IMG/VR virus record: IMGVR_UViG_3300042549_005931
Coordinates: 124,001-188,000 of that record
Length of the DNA stretch: 64,000 nt
Direction: 5' to 3' (one strand)
In this document: in pieces, positions 19,018 through 57,580 of the stretch
Layout: each line of letters begins with the position of its first letter
Numbering within the stretch: the stretch's first letter is position 1
Notes under the pieces: model-generated
Told to the model about the DNA's origin: nothing
The model's database searches: none
The model's input: only the letters and a program-made list of their open reading frames with translations
Made by a program: the position numbers and the translations under genes

Positions 19018-19506
19018 TTAGTAAACTTGAATACATCTATCCATTCTCAAGTTACAAGTAATTGAAGCAATGGCGTCTTGACTATAATCCAAACTACCAA
19101 AATCTAAACTTGTTAAGAATGTTCCTTGGATAATCCATTTTTCCACAACAACACCTGTTGGGTCTAACATTTCTAATTCAATATCTTTCTTATATCCAGC
19201 AGCATAACCCATACGACCAGTTACTGATTCTGCATGTAAACGAAACCATTCCATCAATGCTTGTGAAGCTGAAGGTCCAATTGGGTCCTTAAACGTAACA
19301 TTCATTTCATCCCAAGTAAATCTACCAGCAACATATGTTGATGTATTTAAAAAAGGAATTTCAGTTGAAGTAATTTTAGCTGAAGGTCTTTTAGTTGATG
19401 TTACATACCATTCATTGATACCCATAGAAGAAGGGAATCTTAGAATAAATCTATTTTGTCTTTTCGGTTCAAATGGAACCGGCATTTTCATTAGTAAATC
19501 TGCCAT
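19018..19506 (-). CDS. tail tube protein (T4 gp19-like)
   Basis: FEPKRQNRF, YVAGRFTW, YKKDIELEMLDPTGVVVEKW; directly downstream of the sheath. Confidence 0.92.
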   Translation of the reverse strand: MADLLMKMPVPFEPKRQNRFILRFPSSMGINEWYVTSTKRPSAKITSTEIPFLNTSTYVAGRFTWDEMNVTFKDPIGPSASQALMEWFRLHAESVTGRMGYAAGYKKDIELEMLDPTGVVVEKWIIQGTFLTSLDFGSLDYSQDAIASITCNLRMDRCIQVY

Positions 19507-19787: not shown

Positions 19788-22715
19788 TTAGATATTCTCG
19801 AATGATGCTCCTGTTGGAGTAATGATGAATTCTAAGTCAATAAATTCAAGTGCTCTCGTTGGCTTGATATAAATCTTACCTCTTAAAGTATTTGCATCAA
19901 TGTCCTCAGGGTCATTAGATACTGTAACTTTGAATTCATTTAAACCTCTTTCTTTCTTAATTGAATCCAAGATAGGATTAACCAATCTCAAGAACTCATT
20001 TCTTACTTGTTCGTCATTTTGTTCGAATAGTAATCTAACTGCTACTGCTGAAATTAACTTTCTTGCTCTTAACAATAATCTTCTTACGTTGATTCTGTCT
20101 AATGCAGATTCTTTAACTTGTAAAGTTTTGTTACCCCAAATGATTGTACCTGTATCAGCAAATGTTGCGATAGGGTTAATTCTATTTTTGTATAACTCAT
20201 CTCTTTCATCAAGTGTTAATTTTTTAGTTGCTTTGATTGCATTTACTAAACCTCTTGAATAACCTGCCGGTGCAAACCAAGGATACGCTACGTTATCTGT
20301 CAACGCGATGTTCTTTAATACTTCACCTGTTGGTGGGATGTAAAGTTGTGTTGAGTTATCAGTATCTTTTATTTGAACCCAAGGCCAATATGTTGCTGAA
20401 TAATTAGAGTCAATTGACATATTATCTAATTCACTTGCAATATCATCAGCGGTTGTGATATATTCAGGACCCGGAGCGTTTATTACGTATAATGAATCAG
20501 CTCTATCGTTTTCCACCATATCAATCGCATTAGAAACTAATGAACCATGATTTGACCAATCGATACCCGGTGTTGCGAATAAGTTAATATCAACAGCTTC
20601 AGGATTAGAGAATGTTTGAATACCTTGTAAGTAAGCGTAGTAGTCTGAGTTAGGTGAACCATCGGTGGTTACCTTAAACACACCACCATTATCAGTATTA
20701 CCACTTGTGTAAGTCGCTCTACCTAAAACAAATGCATCTGTATTTGTTCTTGTGTTTCTATAGATATCCCAACCATCAAATCCACCAAACAATGCAAATG
20801 TAAATTTACGATAATTGATATTTGTTAATTTATTATCTGTACCTGTTTGACCTTCTAAATCGTATGGTGTTGTTTGGAACTCAAATGATGGTATTGTATT
20901 ACCAGTAGCCTCACCTATTGTTGCTGCGTTAGATGATAAATGGAAACCATAAGTTACCGTATCCCCACTTACTCCTTTGAATTTCAATAAGTCACTATCA
21001 AATCCAACCTGTGTAGACAATCCTAACATTACCTTTTTAACTTTATCTCCACTTGTAGTATTTGGTACACCTGATGTACTGTAACCTGTTACATCACCCG
21101 CATCATAATATTGTGTTTTAAAAAGTACACTACCTAATGTATTACCATTATCATTGGTGAATGAACTAAAACCCTTGAAACCTGCCGGTATTGCATCTGT
21201 TGGATGATTGTCAGCTAAAATAATTGATACATATTTTGAACGTAATTCATAATCACCATCCGAAGTACCAATTTTTCTACCAATATAGCCGGTCGCCTCA
21301 GGATTCATTGAACATCTTGAATATTTCTCTAATACCACCATATTTTCGTCGGTATCACCATAATCACGAATTAATAAATCAAATTCCGCCGTGTCTAAAT
21401 TAATGTTAATTACAGAAATTTTCAATTGGAAGTTAGCGTCTTCACCATCTGAAATAGTTTGTAATTGGAATAAATCGGATACATTTCCACCACGTACCTC
21501 AGATACAACCATTGGTGATACAGTAGTATCCCACTCAGTTGCAAAATTACTTGTCTCAGAAGTATCTGTTAAAGATGAAACATCTAAACCTCTAATATAT
21601 CCTTTTTCAAAAGCGGTTGCCAATAATTTTGGATAAACTTCGTGTACATATAACGGGAAATCAGAAGCCGATTTATCGAATACTTTTCCACCTAATACTT
21701 TCTTAATGTATTTTGAAGATGATGTGTCTAATGAACATACGAATGAAGTTCCACCCGTAACGGTTGCCCCTGTTACGTTAATTACAAACTCACCTAATGG
21801 ATTAGTTGATAAATCAAAACCCGTATTATCAGAAATCGATACTTGAGTTGAACCAGTAACTTCAAGATTTAATTGTTGGGTAACACCATATGAACCACGT
21901 GGTCTTAATGCCGTAACAACAATTCCATCATAATCTGTATTTAAAACCGCATCAAATGAAAATCTTGTTACGTTAAAAATATTAGCACCACTACTCCATT
22001 CAAATAAGTATGAATAAACCGTGTCAGTACCATCGTTATATGTGTTATACCAGTTTTTATTATATGTTGATGATGCATAATTTGCACCCGTCATTGGTGA
22101 TACCACTTCAGTACCTGTCGGAATTTCAGCAGTTGGGATAACCCCAATTGCAAACCATAGACCAGTATTACCTGTTAGACCACTATATGTTTCATAAATG
22201 TAGTCAGTTACGGTACTACCATCAAAAGCCATCTTAGTTGAAAGTTCAGCATAATATGTACTACCTGTAAATCCTGATAATGGATTTGGGTCCATATTTT
22301 CAGTTACACCTGTAATCACATTATCCAACCATTGGTCTTCCAACGTCGCACCTGTTGCAACTACCGGTGAAAATCCACCTAATGTTGTGATACCTAAAGT
22401 AATATTAGGTTTATATCCAGTTAAACCAAGTACTCTTGTTACGAATAATTGATTTGACTCTTGTAAATAAGATTTTGCTACGTAAGGTAACTCATATTTT
22501 GGATTGTTGTTTCCGAATTTCTCAGGAGACGTTCCACCAAAATAAGTTTTGAATTCGTCGAAATTAGAAATTAAAATTGGTTCAAATGCTGGACCTTTTA
22601 ATGTCTCACCAACTAATCCCAATGTTGTTACTCCGACACTTTGCGCTACGAATGTTAAGTCTTTCTCGGATGTATAAACACCGGGAGAAACGAATACTCT
22701 GTTTGAATTTGCCAT
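19788..22715 (-). CDS. tail sheath protein (T4 gp18-like)
   Basis: VSPGVYTSEKDL N-terminus; YSATYWPW, WFAPAG..RG, WGNKTL, RINVRRLL, FEQND C-terminal domain. Confidence 0.96.
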   Translation of the reverse strand: MANSNRVFVSPGVYTSEKDLTFVAQSVGVTTLGLVGETLKGPAFEPILISNFDEFKTYFGGTSPEKFGNNNPKYELPYVAKSYLQESNQLFVTRVLGLTGYKPNITLGITTLGGFSPVVATGATLEDQWLDNVITGVTENMDPNPLSGFTGSTYYAELSTKMAFDGSTVTDYIYETYSGLTGNTGLWFAIGVIPTAEIPTGTEVVSPMTGANYASSTYNKNWYNTYNDGTDTVYSYLFEWSSGANIFNVTRFSFDAVLNTDYDGIVVTALRPRGSYGVTQQLNLEVTGSTQVSISDNTGFDLSTNPLGEFVINVTGATVTGGTSFVCSLDTSSSKYIKKVLGGKVFDKSASDFPLYVHEVYPKLLATAFEKGYIRGLDVSSLTDTSETSNFATEWDTTVSPMVVSEVRGGNVSDLFQLQTISDGEDANFQLKISVININLDTAEFDLLIRDYGDTDENMVVLEKYSRCSMNPEATGYIGRKIGTSDGDYELRSKYVSIILADNHPTDAIPAGFKGFSSFTNDNGNTLGSVLFKTQYYDAGDVTGYSTSGVPNTTSGDKVKKVMLGLSTQVGFDSDLLKFKGVSGDTVTYGFHLSSNAATIGEATGNTIPSFEFQTTPYDLEGQTGTDNKLTNINYRKFTFALFGGFDGWDIYRNTRTNTDAFVLGRATYTSGNTDNGGVFKVTTDGSPNSDYYAYLQGIQTFSNPEAVDINLFATPGIDWSNHGSLVSNAIDMVENDRADSLYVINAPGPEYITTADDIASELDNMSIDSNYSATYWPWVQIKDTDNSTQLYIPPTGEVLKNIALTDNVAYPWFAPAGYSRGLVNAIKATKKLTLDERDELYKNRINPIATFADTGTIIWGNKTLQVKESALDRINVRRLLLRARKLISAVAVRLLFEQNDEQVRNEFLRLVNPILDSIKKERGLNEFKVTVSNDPEDIDANTLRGKIYIKPTRALEFIDLEFIITPTGASFENI

Positions 22716-22759
22716 TGATTAATGTTTGGTTAAAATTTTTTTATTAGTTTTATTATAAA

Positions 22760-22839
22760 TATCTTTGTTTTTACCAAAGATTTCGATACTTTTCACATAA
22801 AAGATAGTAAATTATCTTTTTCTATCTTTATTTATCTTT
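22760..22839. promoter_or_regulatory. TATCTTT operator-like array between the divergent sheath and RHH genes
   Basis: TATCTTT at 22760, 22813, 22823 and 22833; inverted copies at 22776-22781 and 22800-22806. Confidence 0.6.
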
Positions 22840-22840
22840 T

Positions 22841-22999
22841 ATGGAAGAAAACAAATCTAAAAACGTAAAAATCAGTGAAAAACACCATGAGATGTTAAAA
22901 AACCACTGTGAAAAAAATGGATTAAAAATTTATAAAGTTTTAGAAAGGTGGATTGAAGATTATTGTAAACCCAAAAAGAAAGATATCTACGGTGATTAG
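22841..22999 (+). CDS. small ribbon-helix-helix DNA-binding protein (52 aa, not in ORF track)
   Basis: MEENKSKNVKISEKHHEMLKNHCEKNGLKIYKVLERWIEDYCKPKKKDIYGD: alternating beta strand, helix, Gly turn, helix; TATTTATC 4 nt before the ATG. Confidence 0.75.
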   Translation: MEENKSKNVKISEKHHEMLKNHCEKNGLKIYKVLERWIEDYCKPKKKDIYGD

Positions 23000-24246
23000 A
23001 ATAAATAAGTTACACCAATTCTTGAACCTAAATAAGGTGCACTTAACAATTTAATATTTCTTATACCATCAATATCATAACCCGAACCTTCCTCTTCTTG
23101 AAGACCGTTAATATCAACTGAAACAATACTATTAATAGGATTATTTAATTCAAATATTAATGATGAACCATCATAATCAAAATATTCCGTTGAAACTTGT
23201 AAAATGTTTCCATAATTGTCTATTACAATTGTATTTTGTCTACCCTTATAATATGTAATTGTCACAGTACTACCATCTGATGGTGGAGTATCAAATGTAA
23301 CTTTAGATGTATATGCAATATGGTAATAATCGACATTTTTTTCTTGTAACAAACCATTAACCGATACACTAAATAAAACACCAATACTTTCACCCACACT
23401 AAATTGTGTCTGAATACCATCGGCGGGAAAACTTACAATTGTTACATCAATATCTCTATTAAGAGATTTTCTCTTAGGTGCACCTTCTCTTGCAAACTCG
23501 TTTAATAAAAAGAATCTACTAATTGCTGGTTTAATTTCAAAATCATCACTATCAATTAAGAAACCTAACATTGTGAATTTGTAATTTTGTACATAATATC
23601 TACGGCCATCTATAGTATCTAATGGTGTACTATCATTAACACTATCTAAAACTATTGGGATATAATGACCTTTTACCGTTGTATACGCTTGACGAGATGA
23701 GAATTTTTGTAAAACTTTTTGATTAAACTTATTCAATTCTCTAAACTTTGTACATACAATTGTTACCTCGAAACTAATATCAACGGCAACAGGTTGTGGT
23801 ATTCTATATATGTCGGCACCAACCTGTGTACCATTCCAAGTTGGAACAGACGCATAAAAGAAAGTATCTCTATCAGGAATTGTTCTTTGTGTTACAGGAT
23901 TTGTACCGGGTTGAACATCAGGTTGTCTAATAATTGCAATAAATGGTAACTTTATATTTCTATCCTCATCAACAAATTCCCAACTATTTTCTAACTCCGC
24001 CCATCTTTGTATGGTTAAAATTTTTGGAATGATTGGTATTTGTTCACCATCTGAAACTATTTTAAAGTTTTCCTTAATGAAATCCAACATACCTAAATCT
24101 AAATCATCATGCAATATAGAATCAGGTAAGAATGTGTCGGATTTAGTTATTCTATCCAATAATTCTTGTCTTCTAACAGGTGCACTGTACACATCTTTGT
24201 TTGCACCATATACTTCTATATTGTTTTTTCTTTTAGGTATTGCCAT
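22996..24246 (-). CDS. tail terminator / sheath stabiliser (gp15-like) with two C-terminal beta repeats
   Basis: KLPFIAI.R and IPQPVAVDISFEVTI patterns; lies between neck and sheath; start reassigned to MAIPK (24246). Confidence 0.65.
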   Translation of the reverse strand: MAIPKRKNNIEVYGANKDVYSAPVRRQELLDRITKSDTFLPDSILHDDLDLGMLDFIKENFKIVSDGEQIPIIPKILTIQRWAELENSWEFVDEDRNIKLPFIAIIRQPDVQPGTNPVTQRTIPDRDTFFYASVPTWNGTQVGADIYRIPQPVAVDISFEVTIVCTKFRELNKFNQKVLQKFSSRQAYTTVKGHYIPIVLDSVNDSTPLDTIDGRRYYVQNYKFTMLGFLIDSDDFEIKPAISRFFLLNEFAREGAPKRKSLNRDIDVTIVSFPADGIQTQFSVGESIGVLFSVSVNGLLQEKNVDYYHIAYTSKVTFDTPPSDGSTVTITYYKGRQNTIVIDNYGNILQVSTEYFDYDGSSLIFELNNPINSIVSVDINGLQEEEGSGYDIDGIRNIKLLSAPYLGSRIGVTYLF

Positions 24247-24247
24247 T

Positions 24248-24760
24248 TTATACTCCTCTAAATTCAGTTTCTTGTGCCGGTGCACATGTTATTGTTCTGT
24301 AGAATGGTTTGTAACCAAACATACTATGTTTTCCATCTGAAACTACTTTACCATCGTTAGTAACTTGATAATATCTTACTCTATCTTCAGATTCTGCGTA
24401 TCCAATAAAATCACCATACTTTATATCTACACCCAATTCTTGTAAATGTTTGATATAAACTGATATTGTAATGTTACCTGGCTCATTAAATTTTATCAAT
24501 CCCGTTTTATATGATTTGTTTGTTGGTGCATCTATTTTAACCAATCCGTTAAATTCAACAGGTGGAAAATATTTGATTTGGTCTTTACCAACCTCACCAT
24601 ACACGTCGTCAGTCGTAGTTCTTGTTGTATCAACACGATATAAAACCAACTTCATATTCAAATCTCCATGTAGATACTCTGAACCCATTTGGACGTTCAA
24701 ATCAAAATCATCATTTGAAAGGAATTTAGATAGTCTTGTGATTGGTAATTTGTTTTCCAT
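24248..24760 (-). CDS. neck / head completion protein (gp14-like)
   Basis: DDVYGE..YFPPVEF and HLQELGVDIKYGDFI patterns; TATTTATA 5 nt before the ATG. Confidence 0.62.
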   Translation of the reverse strand: MENKLPITRLSKFLSNDDFDLNVQMGSEYLHGDLNMKLVLYRVDTTRTTTDDVYGEVGKDQIKYFPPVEFNGLVKIDAPTNKSYKTGLIKFNEPGNITISVYIKHLQELGVDIKYGDFIGYAESEDRVRYYQVTNDGKVVSDGKHSMFGYKPFYRTITCAPAQETEFRGV

Positions 24761-24810
24761 ATCCTTATAAATAGTAGATTTTTACGAACTTATTATTTAT
24801 ATTATAAATT

Positions 24811-26562
24811 ATGGAAATAATGATTCCCGAAATAGAGGCGAGAAATATACTTTTATCATATGAAGGGTCTAATAATCAATTATTAGATTGGAAGAAAAAA
24901 TTCACAGAGCTTAAAAGTTTTAAACTTACACGACCACAATCAGAATATGTACAAAAATATCATACTGTGGTACCAAAGGTTGCAAGAAAATATATTAACA
25001 TTGTGAGTACATTTGGTGAAAAACTTGCCGACGATAAATTACTACCAACAGTACCCGAAAAAATTTGGTGTGAAAAGTTATTATGTGAATCCGATAAGGC
25101 GTATCACATTTGGGGTAAATTATTTGAAAACGAACAACTTAGTGCTATGTGGTTACCAAAGGCCGCTATTATGCAGGAAGAAAAGAAACTAAATCGTGTA
25201 ATTGATTATTCAAAATATGGTAGTCGTCCACCAATGGACCACCAAAAAATTGCCATCGAAAAACTATTAGCAAATAATAAATTCATTTTGGCTGATGACA
25301 TGGGACTTGGTAAAACAACGTCCGCAGTTATTGGAGCTCTTGAGAGTGAAGCAAAAAAGATTTTGATAGTATGTCCCGCTTCATTGAAAATAAACTGGGA
25401 GAGAGAGATTAAGAACTACTCAGACCGACGTGTACTAATTGTCGAAGGACGTAAATGGGGTTCGACATTTGACTTTTATATTATTAACTATGATATCATT
25501 AAAAACTACCACTCGACAGATAATTCTAAAGATAGTGATGACTATAAGTTATTGGTTAATGCCGGTTTTGACTTGGCAATCGTAGATGAAGCTCACTACA
25601 TTTCAAATGCAACCGCAAACAGAACAAGATTGTTAAATGACGTACTTGACCAAATCCCAAAAGTTTGGTTATTAACAGGTACACCTATGACATCAAGGCC
25701 AATTAACTATTTCAACTTATTAAAGATTGTTGAATCTCCGTTAACATTAAATTGGCAATCATATGTTCGTAGATATTGTGCCGGTTATCAATTTAGAGTT
25801 GGTAATCGTAAAGTATGGAATACAAACGGTGCAAGTAATTTAGATGAACTTCGTGAAAGAACAAAGAATTTAGTTCTTCGTAGAATGAAAACTGACATTC
25901 TTGATTTACCTGAAAAAATTGTTACACCGGTATTCGTTGAACTTAATAGTAAAATGTACGATGAGGAATTAGAAGAATTTGCACGTATCACCAATGATAA
26001 AAAGAATGATGAAACCATTACAGTTACATTAAATCGTTTAATGAAAATTAGACAATTAATTTCTTACGAAAAAATTCCATATACTTGTGAAATAATTGAC
26101 AAATGTATTGAACAGGGTAAAAAGGTTATTGTTTTAACCAATTTTACTATGACATTGGATATGTTACATGAGAAATATAAAAAGAACTCAGTAACACTTG
26201 ACGGACGTATGCATAAAGATAAACGTCAGGAAAATGTTGATAGATTTCAAACCGATGATAAAATAAAGGTATTCATAGGAAATATTAAAGCTGCGGGTGT
26301 TGGTATTACATTAACTGCCGCTGAGGTTGTTATTATGAATGACTTATCATTTGTACCTGCAGACCACTCTCAAGGTGAAGATAGAGCGTATAGATATGGA
26401 CAGAAAAATAGTGTACTTGTTTACTATCCTGTATTTGAGAATACTATTGAAAAAATTATCTATAATATTCTACAGAAGAAAAAAGGTGTCATTGACCAAG
26501 TTATGGGTGACGGTGAATATTCTGAAACTTTTGGTAAAGACTTATTAAAGCAACTTATTTAA
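24811..26562 (+). CDS. SNF2-family helicase (HARP/SMARCAL1-like)
   Basis: LADDMGLGKT, VCPASLK.NW, DEAH, LTGTP, GVGITLT and QGEDRAYRYGQ motifs. Confidence 0.93.
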   Translation: MEIMIPEIEARNILLSYEGSNNQLLDWKKKFTELKSFKLTRPQSEYVQKYHTVVPKVARKYINIVSTFGEKLADDKLLPTVPEKIWCEKLLCESDKAYHIWGKLFENEQLSAMWLPKAAIMQEEKKLNRVIDYSKYGSRPPMDHQKIAIEKLLANNKFILADDMGLGKTTSAVIGALESEAKKILIVCPASLKINWEREIKNYSDRRVLIVEGRKWGSTFDFYIINYDIIKNYHSTDNSKDSDDYKLLVNAGFDLAIVDEAHYISNATANRTRLLNDVLDQIPKVWLLTGTPMTSRPINYFNLLKIVESPLTLNWQSYVRRYCAGYQFRVGNRKVWNTNGASNLDELRERTKNLVLRRMKTDILDLPEKIVTPVFVELNSKMYDEELEEFARITNDKKNDETITVTLNRLMKIRQLISYEKIPYTCEIIDKCIEQGKKVIVLTNFTMTLDMLHEKYKKNSVTLDGRMHKDKRQENVDRFQTDDKIKVFIGNIKAAGVGITLTAAEVVIMNDLSFVPADHSQGEDRAYRYGQKNSVLVYYPVFENTIEKIIYNILQKKKGVIDQVMGDGEYSETFGKDLLKQLI

Positions 26563-26761: not shown

Positions 26762-26798
26762 ATCTTAAATATAAAGTATTTATAAGAATAAATCAATT

Positions 26799-41501: not shown

Positions 41502-42280
41502 AAAATATAACAGTTATTTTACCCATCCATAGATTAGATGGTAACTATAAAGAAATGTTTAGCAACGCAATTGAATCTTTAAAAGATTTCCATAATGACG
41601 TTAAACTATCTATCGTATGTCCAAACGATGTCAATATTACCCAAGAATTAAGTTCCATTACAAGTAATTTAGAAATTAATACTTTAACACATAATGGTCC
41701 TACCGATTTTTGTTCCCAAATTAATTATGGTGTTGAAAATTGTGATACAGAATGGTTTTCAATTTTAGAAATTGATGATGTTTATAAACCGATATGGTTA
41801 AAGTCAATGAATGAATATGTAAACATTTATCCAGATGTTTCAGTGTTCTTACCAATTGTAAAAGATATTAATGAAGAAGGTAAGTTTGTTAGTTTCACTA
41901 ACGAATCTACATGGGCTTACGGATTTAGTGAAAGACAAGGATTTTTAGATAATGAAGTATTGTTAGATTTCCAAAACTATCAAACAAGTGGTGGTCTTTA
42001 TAAAACACAAGTTATTAAAGATAATGGTTTATTTAAGGACAATATCAAATTAACTTTTAGTTACGAGTTCTTATTACGTTTAACACATAATGGTGTTGCG
42101 ATTATGACAGTACCTAAAATCGGATATCAACACGTAAATTTTAGAGAAGATTCATTATTTTGGAGTTATCAAAATGAAGGTACTAAACTATCTGAAAAAG
42201 AAGCTAAGTTTTGGTTGGAAACTTCTAAGAAAGAATTTTTCTTTAAGAATAAACGTGAGATTGAATATGTAGAAGCTTAA
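41498..42280 (+). CDS. glycosyltransferase family 2 (GT-A fold)
   Basis: ITVILPIH, INYGV...DTEWFSILEIDD, YEFLLRL. Confidence 0.85.
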   Translation: MKNITVILPIHRLDGNYKEMFSNAIESLKDFHNDVKLSIVCPNDVNITQELSSITSNLEINTLTHNGPTDFCSQINYGVENCDTEWFSILEIDDVYKPIWLKSMNEYVNIYPDVSVFLPIVKDINEEGKFVSFTNESTWAYGFSERQGFLDNEVLLDFQNYQTSGGLYKTQVIKDNGLFKDNIKLTFSYEFLLRLTHNGVAIMTVPKIGYQHVNFREDSLFWSYQNEGTKLSEKEAKFWLETSKKEFFFKNKREIEYVEA

Positions 42281-42978
42281 TGCCAAGAAAAAGAACCCAA
42301 AAGATATACTTTGGGGAGGAACAAGAACAAGCGGTAGTACGATATTTAGAATCCGATTCCGATATAGAAAGAAACAAGATATTCAATGAATATTTAAGAG
42401 ACCCCCTCGTTATAATGGTTGAATCAATTATTCGACGTTATAAATTATATAGAAAAGACTTAGAATTTGAAGACATACATTCAGATACTATGTCTTTTCT
42501 TATTACCAAAATTAATAAGTTTGACCACACTAAAAACCATAAGGCATATTCTTACTTTGGAACTATTTGTAAGAATTACCTTATGGGTGCCATACAAAAA
42601 GATACCAAAGAAACTAATCGTAGTGTGTCTTATGATGATATTTCATCTGACATCGAGGATAGGGCCGATTTATCTTATGTTATCGATGAGTACGTAATTG
42701 ACTATAGAGATGTTATCATTAAATTGACAATGTCTTTAGAAGAATTTATGGAAAGTGAACAACTAACGGATAATGAACAAAAATTAGGATACGCTTTACT
42801 TGAAATCTTTAGTAATTTTGATAAAATTTTTCAAGTTGGTGACGGAAATAAATTTAACAAAAATCTTATTTTATTGTCATTGAGAGAAATGACATCACTA
42901 TCCACTAAGGAAATTAGAATATCCTTAAAAAGATTTAAAAGAATGTATGACGGTATTTTAGGTGGATTTTTAGAATAA
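42280..42978 (+). CDS. phage RNA polymerase sigma factor (T4 gp55-like late sigma)
   Basis: Region 2-like EDIHSD...LITKINKFD..K.HKAYSYFGTICKNYL. Confidence 0.75.
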   Translation: MPRKRTQKIYFGEEQEQAVVRYLESDSDIERNKIFNEYLRDPLVIMVESIIRRYKLYRKDLEFEDIHSDTMSFLITKINKFDHTKNHKAYSYFGTICKNYLMGAIQKDTKETNRSVSYDDISSDIEDRADLSYVIDEYVIDYRDVIIKLTMSLEEFMESEQLTDNEQKLGYALLEIFSNFDKIFQVGDGNKFNKNLILLSLREMTSLSTKEIRISLKRFKRMYDGILGGFLE

Positions 42979-57527: not shown

Positions 57528-57580
57528 TTATATAAATACTTTTTTTTATAATATAAACTAAATTATTAGTAATGGAAATA

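What the first reader, a model, noticed from the sequence alone, without database searches (positions are those of the whole stretch)
22754..22999. Unannotated RHH regulator with a helically phased operator array overlapping two divergent late promoters
Seen: a 52-aa RHH-like ORF runs antisense within the tail module. TATCTTT occurs at 22813, 22823 and 22833 (exact 10-bp period). Inverted pairs are AAAAGATA-N6-TATCTTTT and ATCTTTG-N7-CAAAGAT. One site overlaps the gene's own TATTTATC motif and another overlaps the sheath promoter motif (22754-22761). Known: RHH proteins (Arc, CopG, omega) bind arrays of short repeats cooperatively and autoregulate. Inference: a feedback switch tuning sheath/tube expression, or a centromere-like site.
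Basis: partly seen in the sequence, partly recalled or inferred. Interest (0 to 1): 0.6.

Follow-up and report, generated by a model that had tools for sequence, protein, structure and literature searches.

The report
Phage RHH regulator beside tail-sheath gene
A tiny, strongly conserved DNA-binding (ribbon-helix-helix) gene sits back to back with the tail-sheath gene of an uncultured freshwater jumbo phage, and the short spacer between them carries a conserved array of its probable binding sites: an ordinary kind of self-controlled regulator in an unusual, very stable place.

Summary
The 52-aa ORF (22841-22999, +) is a real gene. It has over 200 homologues at 70-96% identity, a coding-type substitution pattern, and is divergent from a tail-sheath gene in 269 of 270 related loci. 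Sub-threshold Pfam, PHROG and PDB hits are almost all to ribbon-helix-helix (RHH) proteins, and so are the best fold matches. A homodimer model with an antiparallel N-terminal ribbon passes its controls.

TATCTTT occurs six times in the 125-bp spacer, one copy imperfect. Three copies lie at an exact 10-bp period, and this array is unique in the 269-kb genome. In 64 distinct relatives the heptads and the 10-bp period are kept while the spacers drift. Sister clades of the protein carry different heptads (CATAC-type, TTCTGCC-type) in the same layout.

TATTTATA is the phage's general upstream motif. One copy precedes the sheath gene and touches a heptad. A TATTTATC variant overlaps the last heptad, 4 nt before the small gene's ATG.

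Best reading: an autoregulated RHH repressor of the Arc/CopG/omega kind that, in this clade, also acts on the sheath promoter. DNA binding, the sign of regulation and expression of the ORF were not shown. It is a new member of a known kind, of moderate interest.

The parts
19788..22715 (-). Tail sheath gene (975 aa), divergent partner of the small gene
   Evidence: Pfam Phage_sheath_1 E 9.5e-14 and Phage_sheath_1C. tblastn hits to phage sheath genes. The tube gene (19018-19506) and baseplate hub gene lie downstream.
22754..22761 (-). TATTTATA, the phage's general promoter-like motif, 38 nt before the sheath ATG
   Evidence: This 8-mer occurs 47 times in oriented non-coding upstream DNA against 1.6 expected. 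67 genes carry TATTTAT[AT], with no conserved -35-like element. It is present before the sheath gene in 64 of 64 distinct relatives.
22760..22782 (.). Inverted pair 1: TATCTTT(G)-N7-(C)AAAGATT. Its left heptad overlaps the sheath motif by 2 nt. TATCTTTG also matches a Bacteroidota-type -7 box.
   Evidence: It is the only such palindrome in the genome. It is kept in 60 of 64 distinct relatives with per-column identity of about 0.9-1.0. TAT[AC]TTTG boxes occur elsewhere in the genome.
22787..22794 (+). Conserved block TACTTTTC, a weak -7-like box and a candidate alternative promoter element for the small gene
   Evidence: The block is conserved in relatives. Its variants are TACTTTT[T/C/A/G]. 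The role is inferred only.
22799..22820 (.). Inverted pair 2: AAAAGATA-N6-TATCTTTT
   Evidence: AAGATA-N5-7-TATC is present in 54 of 64 distinct relatives.
22813..22839 (+). Three direct TATCTTT heptads at an exact 10-bp period, ending 1 nt before the ATG
   Evidence: In relatives there are 2-4 units, and successive units are 10 bp apart in 105 of 109 cases.
22829..22836 (+). TATTTATC, a variant of the phage promoter-like motif. It lies 4 nt before the small gene's ATG and overlaps the third heptad.
   Evidence: A 3-5 nt distance to the ATG is the genome-wide mode for this motif. TATTTAT[ACT] lies within 40 nt of the ATG in 50 of 64 relatives, though not always at the same heptad.
22841..22999 (+). 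52-aa ribbon-helix-helix-like gene: ribbon about residues 7-12, helices 13-26 and 30-41, conserved basic/DIYG tail
   Evidence: Family hits: Pfam RepB-RCR_reg and ParG below cut-off; PHROG Arc-like repressor E 2.9e-4.
Models: AF2 monomer; Foldseek list dominated by RHH proteins; dimer model 0.42 against 0.00 for controls.
Conservation: 224 homologues; codon-position identity 0.91/0.92/0.61; single copy in the genome.
22996..24285 (-). Convergent 429-aa gene of unknown function. Its stop codon overlaps the small gene's stop, so there is no room for terminators.
   Evidence: No significant family hit. This neighbour is not conserved across clades.

Best explanation
The 52-aa ORF encodes a ribbon-helix-helix DNA-binding protein that works as a dimer. 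Its dimers most likely bind the clade-specific heptad TATCTTT side by side on one face of the DNA.

The inverted pair at 22799-22820 and the three heptads at a 10-bp period (22813-22839) cover the gene's own promoter-like TATTTATC and its start codon. The protein would therefore shut off its own synthesis once enough has been made (autorepression).

In the window's clade a further palindromic heptad pair (22760-22782) abuts the TATTTATA element of the divergent tail-sheath gene. The same protein would then also set the level or timing of sheath transcription, most likely by damping it.

Shown here: the gene is real and conserved, it has RHH character, a homodimer is predicted, and the site array is conserved and co-varies with the protein clade.
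Inferred: binding of this protein to these sites, and repression of either promoter.
For: 1. Real gene.
- 224 homologues of 51-53 aa at 70-96% identity, on contigs up to 330 kb.
- 140 clusters at 50% identity in the exhaustive search.
- Identity by codon position is 0.91/0.92/0.61.

2. RHH character.
- Pfam RepB-RCR_reg E 7.7e-4 and ParG E 5.9e-3. 12 of 30 diverse members hit RepB-RCR_reg, 3 hit ParG and 1 hits MatP_C.
- PHROG Arc-like repressor E 2.9e-4.
- ParG, SvtR and omega are among the top PDB profile hits.
- The model has helices at 13-26 and 30-41. The Foldseek list is almost entirely RHH proteins.
- The homodimer model scores 0.42 against a best control of 0.00. That mark was reached by 21 of 30 solved homodimers and 0 of 23 single chains. 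The runs agree in at least 95% of contacts, with partner pLDDT 71. The ribbon contacts are symmetric: 9:9, 8:10, 7:11.
- K7, N8, K10 and G27 are invariant in 128 distinct proteins.

3. The sites.
- The array is unique in the genome.
- In 64 distinct relatives every spacer holds at least 2 TATCTT copies, and the unit spacing is 10 bp in 105 of 109 cases.
- Mean intergenic identity is 0.81 against 0.61 at third codon positions. The heptads and palindrome reach 0.9-1.0.

4. Co-variation with the protein.
- Clades with other ribbon and helix-A residues carry other repeats in the same layout. CATAC occurs in 34 of 41 and TTCT[GA]CC in 32 of 34, with no cross-occurrence.

5. Link to the sheath gene.
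- The small gene is divergent from a sheath gene in 269 of 270 loci, while its other neighbour varies.
- The direct units sit 50-70 bp from the sheath motif in all four clades examined.
- The TATTTAT[AT] promoters have no -35-like element of their own. A protein bound directly upstream would therefore sit where the polymerase must.
Against: - No binding data and no protein-DNA model.
- All family and fold matches are below curated or significance thresholds individually.
- Expression is not shown. The one RNA data set with matching contigs covers only the sheath gene.
- The DNA-facing ribbon residues N8, K10 and S12 are the same in the window's clade and in the small KNLKIS clades that carry CATAC repeats. 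A simple ribbon code therefore does not explain the change of site.
- Only the window's clade has a repeat copy at the sheath promoter: 64 of 64, against 3 of 41, 0 of 34 and 0 of 5 elsewhere. Direct repression of the sheath promoter cannot be the family's general role.
- Clade-level differences in the spacer could partly be plain divergence.
- The small gene's true promoter is unknown. Candidates are TATTTATC, the -7-like TATCTTTG and TACTTTTC.
Confidence: 0.6

Rival explanations
1. The RHH protein binds the array but activates the sheath promoter. It would bind 50-70 bp upstream on one helical face, like a class I activator or an upstream stimulatory element. The copy next to the promoter would add fine control.
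For: The direct units lie at a fixed 50-70 bp from the sheath motif in all four clades examined, while their distance to the small gene's ATG varies. The units are strictly 10-bp phased. The + oriented copy at 22760 is in helical phase with the three-unit array, at offsets of 53, 63 and 73 bp. The TATTTATA promoters lack a -35 element.
Against: By general knowledge, known small RHH factors act mostly as repressors. In the window's clade a palindromic site directly abuts the promoter element, a position typical of occlusion. The fixed distance can also come from a fixed position of the small gene's own promoter.
Confidence: 0.15
2. The protein only autoregulates at this locus and its real target is elsewhere: host DNA, the missing 19% of the phage genome, or a protein partner bound by the conserved C-terminal DIYG tail. 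Sitting next to the sheath gene would be a frozen accident of gene order.
For: Sister clades have no repeat copy at the sheath promoter. The C-terminal D48-x-Y50-G51 and H16/C23/C42 are conserved yet are not needed for a minimal RHH fold. The record is about 81% complete. One homologue (L086) lies next to a primase-like gene, not a sheath gene.
Against: 269 of 270 loci keep the sheath neighbour across clades only about 50% identical, while the other neighbour changes. No second array was found in 269 kb. The gene is single copy. The window's clade has an invariant heptad palindrome at the sheath promoter.
Confidence: 0.15
3. The repeats act without the RHH protein. The inverted pairs would be RNA hairpins in the small gene's leader or in read-through transcripts from the upstream - strand operon, acting as an insulator or in translational control. 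The 10-bp phased T-tracts would bend the DNA.
For: The RNA folds are better than shuffles: -10.4 kcal/mol (z -2.5) for 22795-22850, and -6.5 kcal/mol (z -3.6) for the - strand palindrome. In the window an 11-nt perfect complement pairs 22796-22806 with 22833-22843, which includes the ATG. In the KNLKIT clade a central palindrome shows compensatory changes and is followed by a T-run on the - strand.
Against: The ATG-sequestering complement is not kept in relatives. A hairpin does not explain direct repeats at a strict 10-bp period. TATC is the most conserved part of the unit, not the T-tract. The stems are AU-rich and weak. There is no Rfam match. The palindrome next to the sheath promoter is invariant in sequence rather than co-varying.
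Confidence: 0.07
4. It is a centromere-like site with a ParG/omega-type adaptor for segregating or positioning phage DNA, or alternatively an RHH antitoxin.
For: ParG is the second Pfam hit and the best Foldseek and PDB-profile RHH hit. Such proteins typically bind arrays of short repeats (general knowledge).
Against: No ParA-type ATPase (AAA_31) was found in the record, although the controls were detected. There is no co-oriented downstream gene that could be a toxin or partner, because the next gene is convergent and overlaps the stop codon. The tight pairing with a structural gene's promoter is not expected for either role.
Confidence: 0.03

Closest known systems
Arc and Mnt repressors of Salmonella phage P22 (RHH; phrog_582 'Arc-like repressor')
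   Same: A phage-encoded protein of about 50 aa with a beta-alpha-alpha fold. It forms a dimer through an N-terminal antiparallel ribbon. Neighbouring dimers would bind about one helical turn apart, at a spacer between divergent promoters, and autoregulate. PHROG hit E 2.9e-4. Arc appears in the Foldseek list.
   Different: Arc controls the antirepressor region of a temperate phage; here the partner is a tail-sheath gene of a jumbo phage in which I saw no lysogeny genes. The sites here are 2-4 direct heptads plus inverted copies, not one 21-bp operator. In the model the residue on the ribbon's symmetry axis is hydrophobic V9. The conserved His/Cys residues and the DIYG tail are extra.
CopG / RepB-RCR_reg plasmid copy-control RHH proteins (Pfam PF10723, PF01402)
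   Same: This is the best Pfam family: 19.8 bits against a cut-off of 21, and 12 of 30 relatives match. These are small autoregulators that polymerise cooperatively along one DNA face over their own promoter.
   Different: The score is below the curated cut-off. No replication gene is co-transcribed. The setting is a phage structural module.
Omega (inc18 plasmids) and ParG (TP228): RHH proteins that bind arrays of short repeats
   Same: Both recognise short non-palindromic units repeated in direct and inverted orientation at several promoters. The top structural and profile hits are to these two.
   Different: Omega heptads are contiguous with a 7-bp period; here the period is 10 bp. Omega and ParG work with ParA-type ATPases, and none was found here. 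Only one array exists in the genome.
SvtR / AvtR, RHH regulators of archaeal viruses that control structural genes
   Same: These are viral RHH proteins that regulate virion-protein genes as well as their own. Both appear among the weak hits.
   Different: They come from archaeal viruses. There is no detectable specific sequence relationship and no shared site architecture.

Membership tests
Ribbon-helix-helix superfamily (Pfam clan Met_repress) | About 45-residue beta-strand / helix / helix unit | tested here: met
   The AF2 model has helices at 13-26 and 30-41 and an extended N-terminus, with mean pLDDT 72. The best Foldseek rows are ParG, omega, Arc, McdB, CopG, AvtR and PutA, with TM 0.5-0.6 but all at E > 0.5.
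Ribbon-helix-helix superfamily (Pfam clan Met_repress) | Homodimer with an antiparallel two-stranded ribbon made of the two N-terminal strands | tested here: met
   The dimer model scores 0.42 against a best control of 0.00. That mark was reached by 21 of 30 solved homodimers and 0 of 23 single chains. Contact agreement is at least 95% and pLDDT is 71. The contacts 9:9, 8:10 and 7:11 are symmetric. This is a prediction only.
Ribbon-helix-helix superfamily (Pfam clan Met_repress) | Glycine-containing turn between the helices; polar or basic residues alternating with hydrophobic ones in the strand | tested here: met
   G27 is invariant. K7, N8 and K10 are invariant, with V/L/I at position 9 and I at position 11, in 128 distinct proteins.
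Ribbon-helix-helix superfamily (Pfam clan Met_repress) | Sequence match to a curated RHH family above its cut-off | tested here: not met
   RepB-RCR_reg scores 19.8 bits against a cut-off of 21, and ParG 17.2 against 21.4. The hits are weak but consistent: 12, 3 and 1 of 30 relatives hit three RHH families. phrog_582 gives E 2.9e-4. PDB profile hits are at E 0.2-1.
Ribbon-helix-helix superfamily (Pfam clan Met_repress) | Sequence-specific binding to repeated operator sites | not testable with these tools
   Indirect evidence only: a conserved, phased, clade-specific repeat array lies beside the gene.
ParG/omega-type partition adaptors | Partner ParA/ParF-type ATPase and centromere repeats | tested here: not met
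   No AAA_31 match in the 269-kb record, while all 14 control genomes were detected. The record is about 81% complete, so absence is not absolute.
RHH antitoxins (ParD, CopG-type VapB, RelB) | Co-transcribed toxin gene directly downstream | tested here: not met
   The next gene is convergent and its stop codon overlaps the small gene's. The same geometry is seen in L082-L085.
CopG / RepB-RCR_reg copy-control repressors | Operon with a replication initiator whose promoter the protein represses | tested here: not met
   The neighbours are the tail sheath gene and a 429-aa gene of unknown function.

The most novel reading that the evidence does not exclude
A whole lineage of freshwater jumbo phages may keep a dedicated one-gene control cassette for a single virion protein. 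In this reading, an RHH protein and its repeat array have changed their recognition sequence together, clade by clade, and set the dose or timing of tail-sheath synthesis. One possible benefit is avoiding the runaway sheath polymerisation seen when sheath protein is in excess. The invariant His16/Cys23/Cys42 residues and the C-terminal DIYG tail could let the switch sense metal or redox state, or a protein partner.
Probability: 0.25. Interest if true: 0.55.

Novelty: new member of a known kind. Interest (0 to 1): 0.4.

Why it matters
Small RHH repressors with repeat operators are textbook. A regulator held next to one structural gene in 269 of 270 loci across clades only about 50% identical, apparently in lytic jumbo phages (I saw no lysogeny genes), is not something I found described in two literature searches.

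If the protein does tune sheath transcription, it gives a simple, testable example of gene-specific dosage control inside a phage late programme.

The clade-specific heptads (TATCTTT, CATAC-type, TTCTGCC-type) with near-identical ribbons are also a natural series for studying how RHH specificity changes.

The promoter motifs found along the way give a first transcription map and a host clue for an uncultured group. These are TATTTATA, often 3-5 nt from the ATG, and Bacteroidota-type -33/-7 boxes.

Tried and rejected
- **Close DNA relatives among sequenced phages:** none. tblastn of the small protein against phage records gave only chance-level hits.
- **Sliding-clamp or partner-binding tail:** no other protein in the genome, including the DNA polymerase, ends with a DIYG-like tail. 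Idea dropped.
- **Partition system:** no ParA-type ATPase.
- **Phage RNA polymerase as reader of TATTTATA:** no T7-type and no multisubunit RNAP. The T7-type search detected nothing in any control genome either, so it is uninformative. Two sigma-70 region 2 ORFs were found instead.
- **Expression:** the single metatranscriptome with matching words (X20) has contigs only on 19863-22600 and none on 22709-25000. These are contigs, so strand, transcript ends and absence cannot be judged.
- **Known RNA families in 22600-23100:** none.
- **Sigma-70-type consensus scan of the region:** 6 sites against 5.5 expected, uninformative. No terminator between the genes.
- **Long-range complements (22721-22735 with 22768-22782; 22796-22806 with 22833-22843):** not kept, and not co-varying, in relatives.
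- **Second array in relatives' contigs:** two of five loci could not be searched. The three records searched (39-52% complete) gave two exact hits: one is that record's own sheath-side array, and the other is an isolated, unexamined pair elsewhere in G001. No sign of a second array, but the test is weak.
- **Cultured distant relatives with a similar sheath (Microcystis phage Mel-JY01, Flavobacterium phage immuto):** no divergent small gene is annotated before the sheath gene.
- **Literature:** two searches found no description of this arrangement.

Full report
**Setting.** The window is bases 124001-188000 of a 269,133-bp IMG/VR virus record with 32% G+C, estimated about 81% complete. Near-identical DNA occurs in lake and other freshwater metagenomes from about a dozen studies. 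No sequenced phage is close at the DNA level. The sheath protein is distantly like those of Microcystis phage Mel-JY01, Flavobacterium phage immuto and T4-like cyanophages.

**The observation.**
- The 52-aa ORF runs 22841-22999 on the + strand.
- On one side lies the - strand tail-sheath gene (19788-22715; Pfam Phage_sheath_1), with tube and baseplate-hub genes beyond it.
- On the other side lies a - strand 429-aa gene whose stop codon overlaps the ORF's stop.
- The 125-bp spacer holds TATCTTT at 22760, 22813, 22823 and 22833 on +, at 22806..22800 on -, and an imperfect copy at 22782..22776 on -.

These copies form two inverted pairs of opposite polarity and a three-unit direct array at exactly 10 bp. 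The arrangement is far beyond chance. The 10-bp pair pattern gave 3 matches in the window, two of them here, against 0.23 expected. The triple is unique in 269 kb even with two mismatches. It is the only place with 4 copies in 60 bp, and the only palindrome of its kind. The single word TATCTTT is common in the window (64 against 26 expected), so only the cluster counts.

**The ORF is a gene.** A word-indexed search found 224 proteins of 51-53 aa at 70-96% identity, on contigs up to 330 kb. Sources call them 'hypothetical protein', or wrongly 'coproporphyrinogen III oxidase'. The exhaustive profile search found 140 clusters at 50% identity. Across 61 distinct related loci, pairwise identity by codon position is 0.91, 0.92 and 0.61. 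That is the same pattern as in the sheath gene's 5' end (0.89, 0.93, 0.62). The gene is single copy in the genome.

**It looks like a ribbon-helix-helix protein.**
- No single match is significant by curated thresholds. RepB-RCR_reg scores 19.8 bits against 21, and ParG 17.2 against 21.4.
- Almost every weak signal points the same way. 12, 3 and 1 of 30 diverse relatives hit RepB-RCR_reg, ParG and MatP_C. PHROG 'Arc-like repressor' gives E 2.9e-4. ParG, SvtR and omega are among the top PDB profile hits.
- The AF2 model has helices at 13-26 and 30-41 after an extended N-terminus. Its Foldseek list is almost wholly RHH proteins, all at E > 0.5 as expected for 52 residues.
- A two-copy model scored 0.42 against a best control of 0.00. 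That mark was reached by 21 of 30 solved homodimers and 0 of 23 single chains. The runs agree in at least 95% of contacts, with partner pLDDT 71. The symmetric contacts 9:9, 8:10 and 7:11 are those of an antiparallel ribbon. This supports dimerisation and likeness to RHH dimers but does not show it.
- In 128 distinct proteins K7, N8, K10, H16, L19, K20, C23, G27 and I38 are invariant.

**The spacer is under selection and the array is conserved.** I collected 80 close loci, then three further sets seeded with diverged homologues, plus five loci found by exact look-up. In the 64 distinct spacers of the window's clade:
- the sheath-side TATTTAT[AT] is present in 64;
- TATCTTTG is present in 60, and the N7 palindrome in 60;
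- the second inverted pair is present in 54;
- there are 2-4 direct TATC units before the ATG, and successive units are 10 bp apart in 105 of 109 cases.

Mean identity of the spacer is 0.81 against 0.61 at third codon positions. The heptads and the palindrome reach 0.9-1.0, and the bases between units drift. TATC is the most constant part of the unit, which argues for base-specific recognition rather than only T-tract bending.

**Co-variation with the protein.** Average-linkage clustering of the proteins gives the window's clade and several sister clades.

| Clade | Ribbon and helix-A start | Repeat in the spacer | Distinct spacers with at least 2 copies |
|---|---|---|---|
| Window's clade | KN[V/I]KIS-EKHH | TATCTT | 64 of 64 |
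| Sister clade | KNLKIT-PQTH | CATAC(T) | 34 of 41 |
| Sister clade | KNLKID-SEVH | TTCT[G/A]CC | 32 of 34 |
| Two small clades | KNLKIS | CATAC | 5 of 6 |

None of these repeats occurs twice in another clade's spacer. The layout is the same everywhere: one inverted copy, then direct copies at a 10-11-bp period, just 5' of the small gene. This is what a regulator and its operator look like when they diverge together. Two caveats apply. Clade-level differences are not independent events. The presumed DNA-facing residues N8, K10 and S12 are identical in two clades with different repeats, so specificity must also involve the N-terminal arm or the start of helix A.

**Link to the sheath gene.** In 269 of 270 loci the small gene is divergent from a gene whose product starts with the conserved sheath N-terminus. 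The downstream neighbour changes between clades. The direct units lie 50-70 bp from the sheath-side motif in all four clades examined, whereas their distance to the small gene's ATG varies. Only the window's clade also has a repeat copy touching the sheath motif: 64 of 64, against 3 of 41, 0 of 34 and 0 of 5. Mel-JY01 and immuto have no divergent small gene annotated before their sheath genes.

**Promoters.** TATTTATA, read in the gene's direction, is the dominant upstream word of this genome: 47 copies against 1.6 expected.
- 67 genes carry TATTTAT[AT] within 90 nt. No -35-like element accompanies it, and the distance to the ATG peaks at 3-5 nt, which suggests very short or absent leaders.
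- It precedes structural genes but also the DNA polymerase and SNF2 helicase genes. 'Late' is therefore not established.
- The phage has two ORFs with sigma-70 region 2 and no polymerase of its own that I could detect. A phage sigma factor is the likely reader of the motif; this is an inference.
- The sheath gene has the motif 38 nt upstream, at 22761..22754.
- The small gene has TATTTATC 4 nt upstream, which fits the common geometry. A TATTTAT[ACT] lies within 40 nt of its ATG in 50 of 64 relatives. Canonical TATTTATA copies occur before the gene in two sister clades.
- A second class, TTG-N19-TAT[A/C]TTTG at 20-40 nt from start codons, is concentrated at 253-268 kb. It matches the Bacteroidota -33/-7 promoter type known from the literature. 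TATCTTTG at 22760 and TACTTTTC at 22787 resemble its -7 box, so a host-type promoter for the small gene cannot be excluded.

**Mechanism proposed.** RHH dimers bind the heptads cooperatively on one DNA face. The four-copy block at 22799-22839 overlaps the small gene's promoter-like element and start, giving autorepression. The palindrome at 22760-22782 directly abuts the sheath promoter element, which has no -35 box of its own. Occupancy there should hinder the polymerase and damp or delay sheath transcription.
- Shown: a gene, a fold class, a predicted dimer, and a conserved, co-varying site array.
- Inferred: who binds, and with what effect.

Activation from the -60/-70 position, pure autoregulation with a target elsewhere, and RNA-hairpin or DNA-bending roles remain possible. 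Partition and antitoxin roles are unlikely.

**Expression.** One metatranscriptome held a few matching words. Its contigs lie only on the sheath gene, and none reach 22709-25000. Because these are contigs, this neither shows nor excludes transcription of the small gene.

**Comparison and verdict.** In function this most resembles Arc/Mnt, CopG and omega/ParG: small RHH dimers that polymerise on short repeats and control their own and a neighbouring promoter. It is not a demonstrable member of any one curated family because every score is below cut-off. It lacks the partners that define partition adaptors, antitoxins and copy-control repressors. It is a new, widespread family-level member of a known kind. 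Its interest lies in the near-universal pairing with the tail-sheath gene and the clade-wise recoding of its repeats.

Noticed in passing
whole genome G000; in the window e.g. 24766-24773 (-), 24794-24801 (+), 26777-26784 (+), 57531-57538 (-): TATTTATA, read in the gene's direction, is the genome's dominant upstream motif: 47 copies against 1.6 expected, and 67 genes carry it. No -35-like element accompanies it. It most often lies only 3-5 nt before the ATG, which suggests leaderless or near-leaderless mRNAs. It is the reverse complement of the T4 late-promoter word TATAAATA.
   Followed up: partly
G000 253-268 kb (outside the window); in the window e.g. upstream of 3478 (-), 30817 (-), 50437 (-): There is a second promoter-like class, TTG-N19-TAT[A/C]TTTG, 20-40 nt before start codons. 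It matches the Bacteroidota -33/-7 promoter type and hints at a Bacteroidota host and an early gene block at the record's right end.
   Followed up: partly
window 42280-42978 (+) and G000 80206-81015 (-): Two phage ORFs carry sigma-70 region 2 (E 1.2e-6 and 1.1e-17). No phage RNA polymerase was detected. These are candidates for reading the TATTTATA motif. The second one has a -7-type box upstream.
   Followed up: partly
window 22841-22999 (protein residues 16, 23, 42, 48-51): H16 and C23 are invariant, and C42 is present in 124 of 128 distinct homologues. A C-terminal D-x-Y-G follows a lysine-rich stretch and is also conserved. None of these is needed for a minimal RHH fold. They could form a metal or redox site, or a partner-binding tail. 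No other protein in the genome ends in a similar tail.
   Followed up: partly
L089-L168 (KNLKIT clade), centre of the sheath/RHH spacer: A 9-10-bp-arm palindrome shows compensatory changes between members and is followed by a T-run on the - strand. It looks like an intrinsic terminator that would stop read-through from the upstream - strand genes just before the sheath promoter. The window's clade has no equivalent.
   Followed up: no
L086:3399-3656: This is the one homologue (46% identical, ribbon KNIKIS) that is not next to a sheath gene. It precedes a primase-like gene. Its upstream region also carries several TATC units, two of them 10 bp apart.
   Followed up: no
window 22996-22999: The stop codons of the small gene (+) and of the 429-aa gene (-) overlap. 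Relatives show the same tight abutment (L083, L085). Transcripts of the two strands must therefore overlap, giving scope for antisense interference between the regulator's mRNA and the - strand structural-gene transcripts.
   Followed up: no
window 19863-22600: Contigs of one metatranscriptome (X20, 90-99% alike) lie along the sheath gene, consistent with sheath mRNA being abundant in a natural sample. Contigs alone do not prove transcription.
   Followed up: partly
homologues P0008, P0019, P0039, P0045, P0048, P0115: Some public records name these 52-aa proteins 'coproporphyrinogen III oxidase'. One cluster member is named 'GTP:adenosylcobinamide-phosphate guanylyltransferase'. The first name traces to a chance sub-threshold Pfam hit (E 0.087 here) and is a mis-annotation.
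   Followed up: yes
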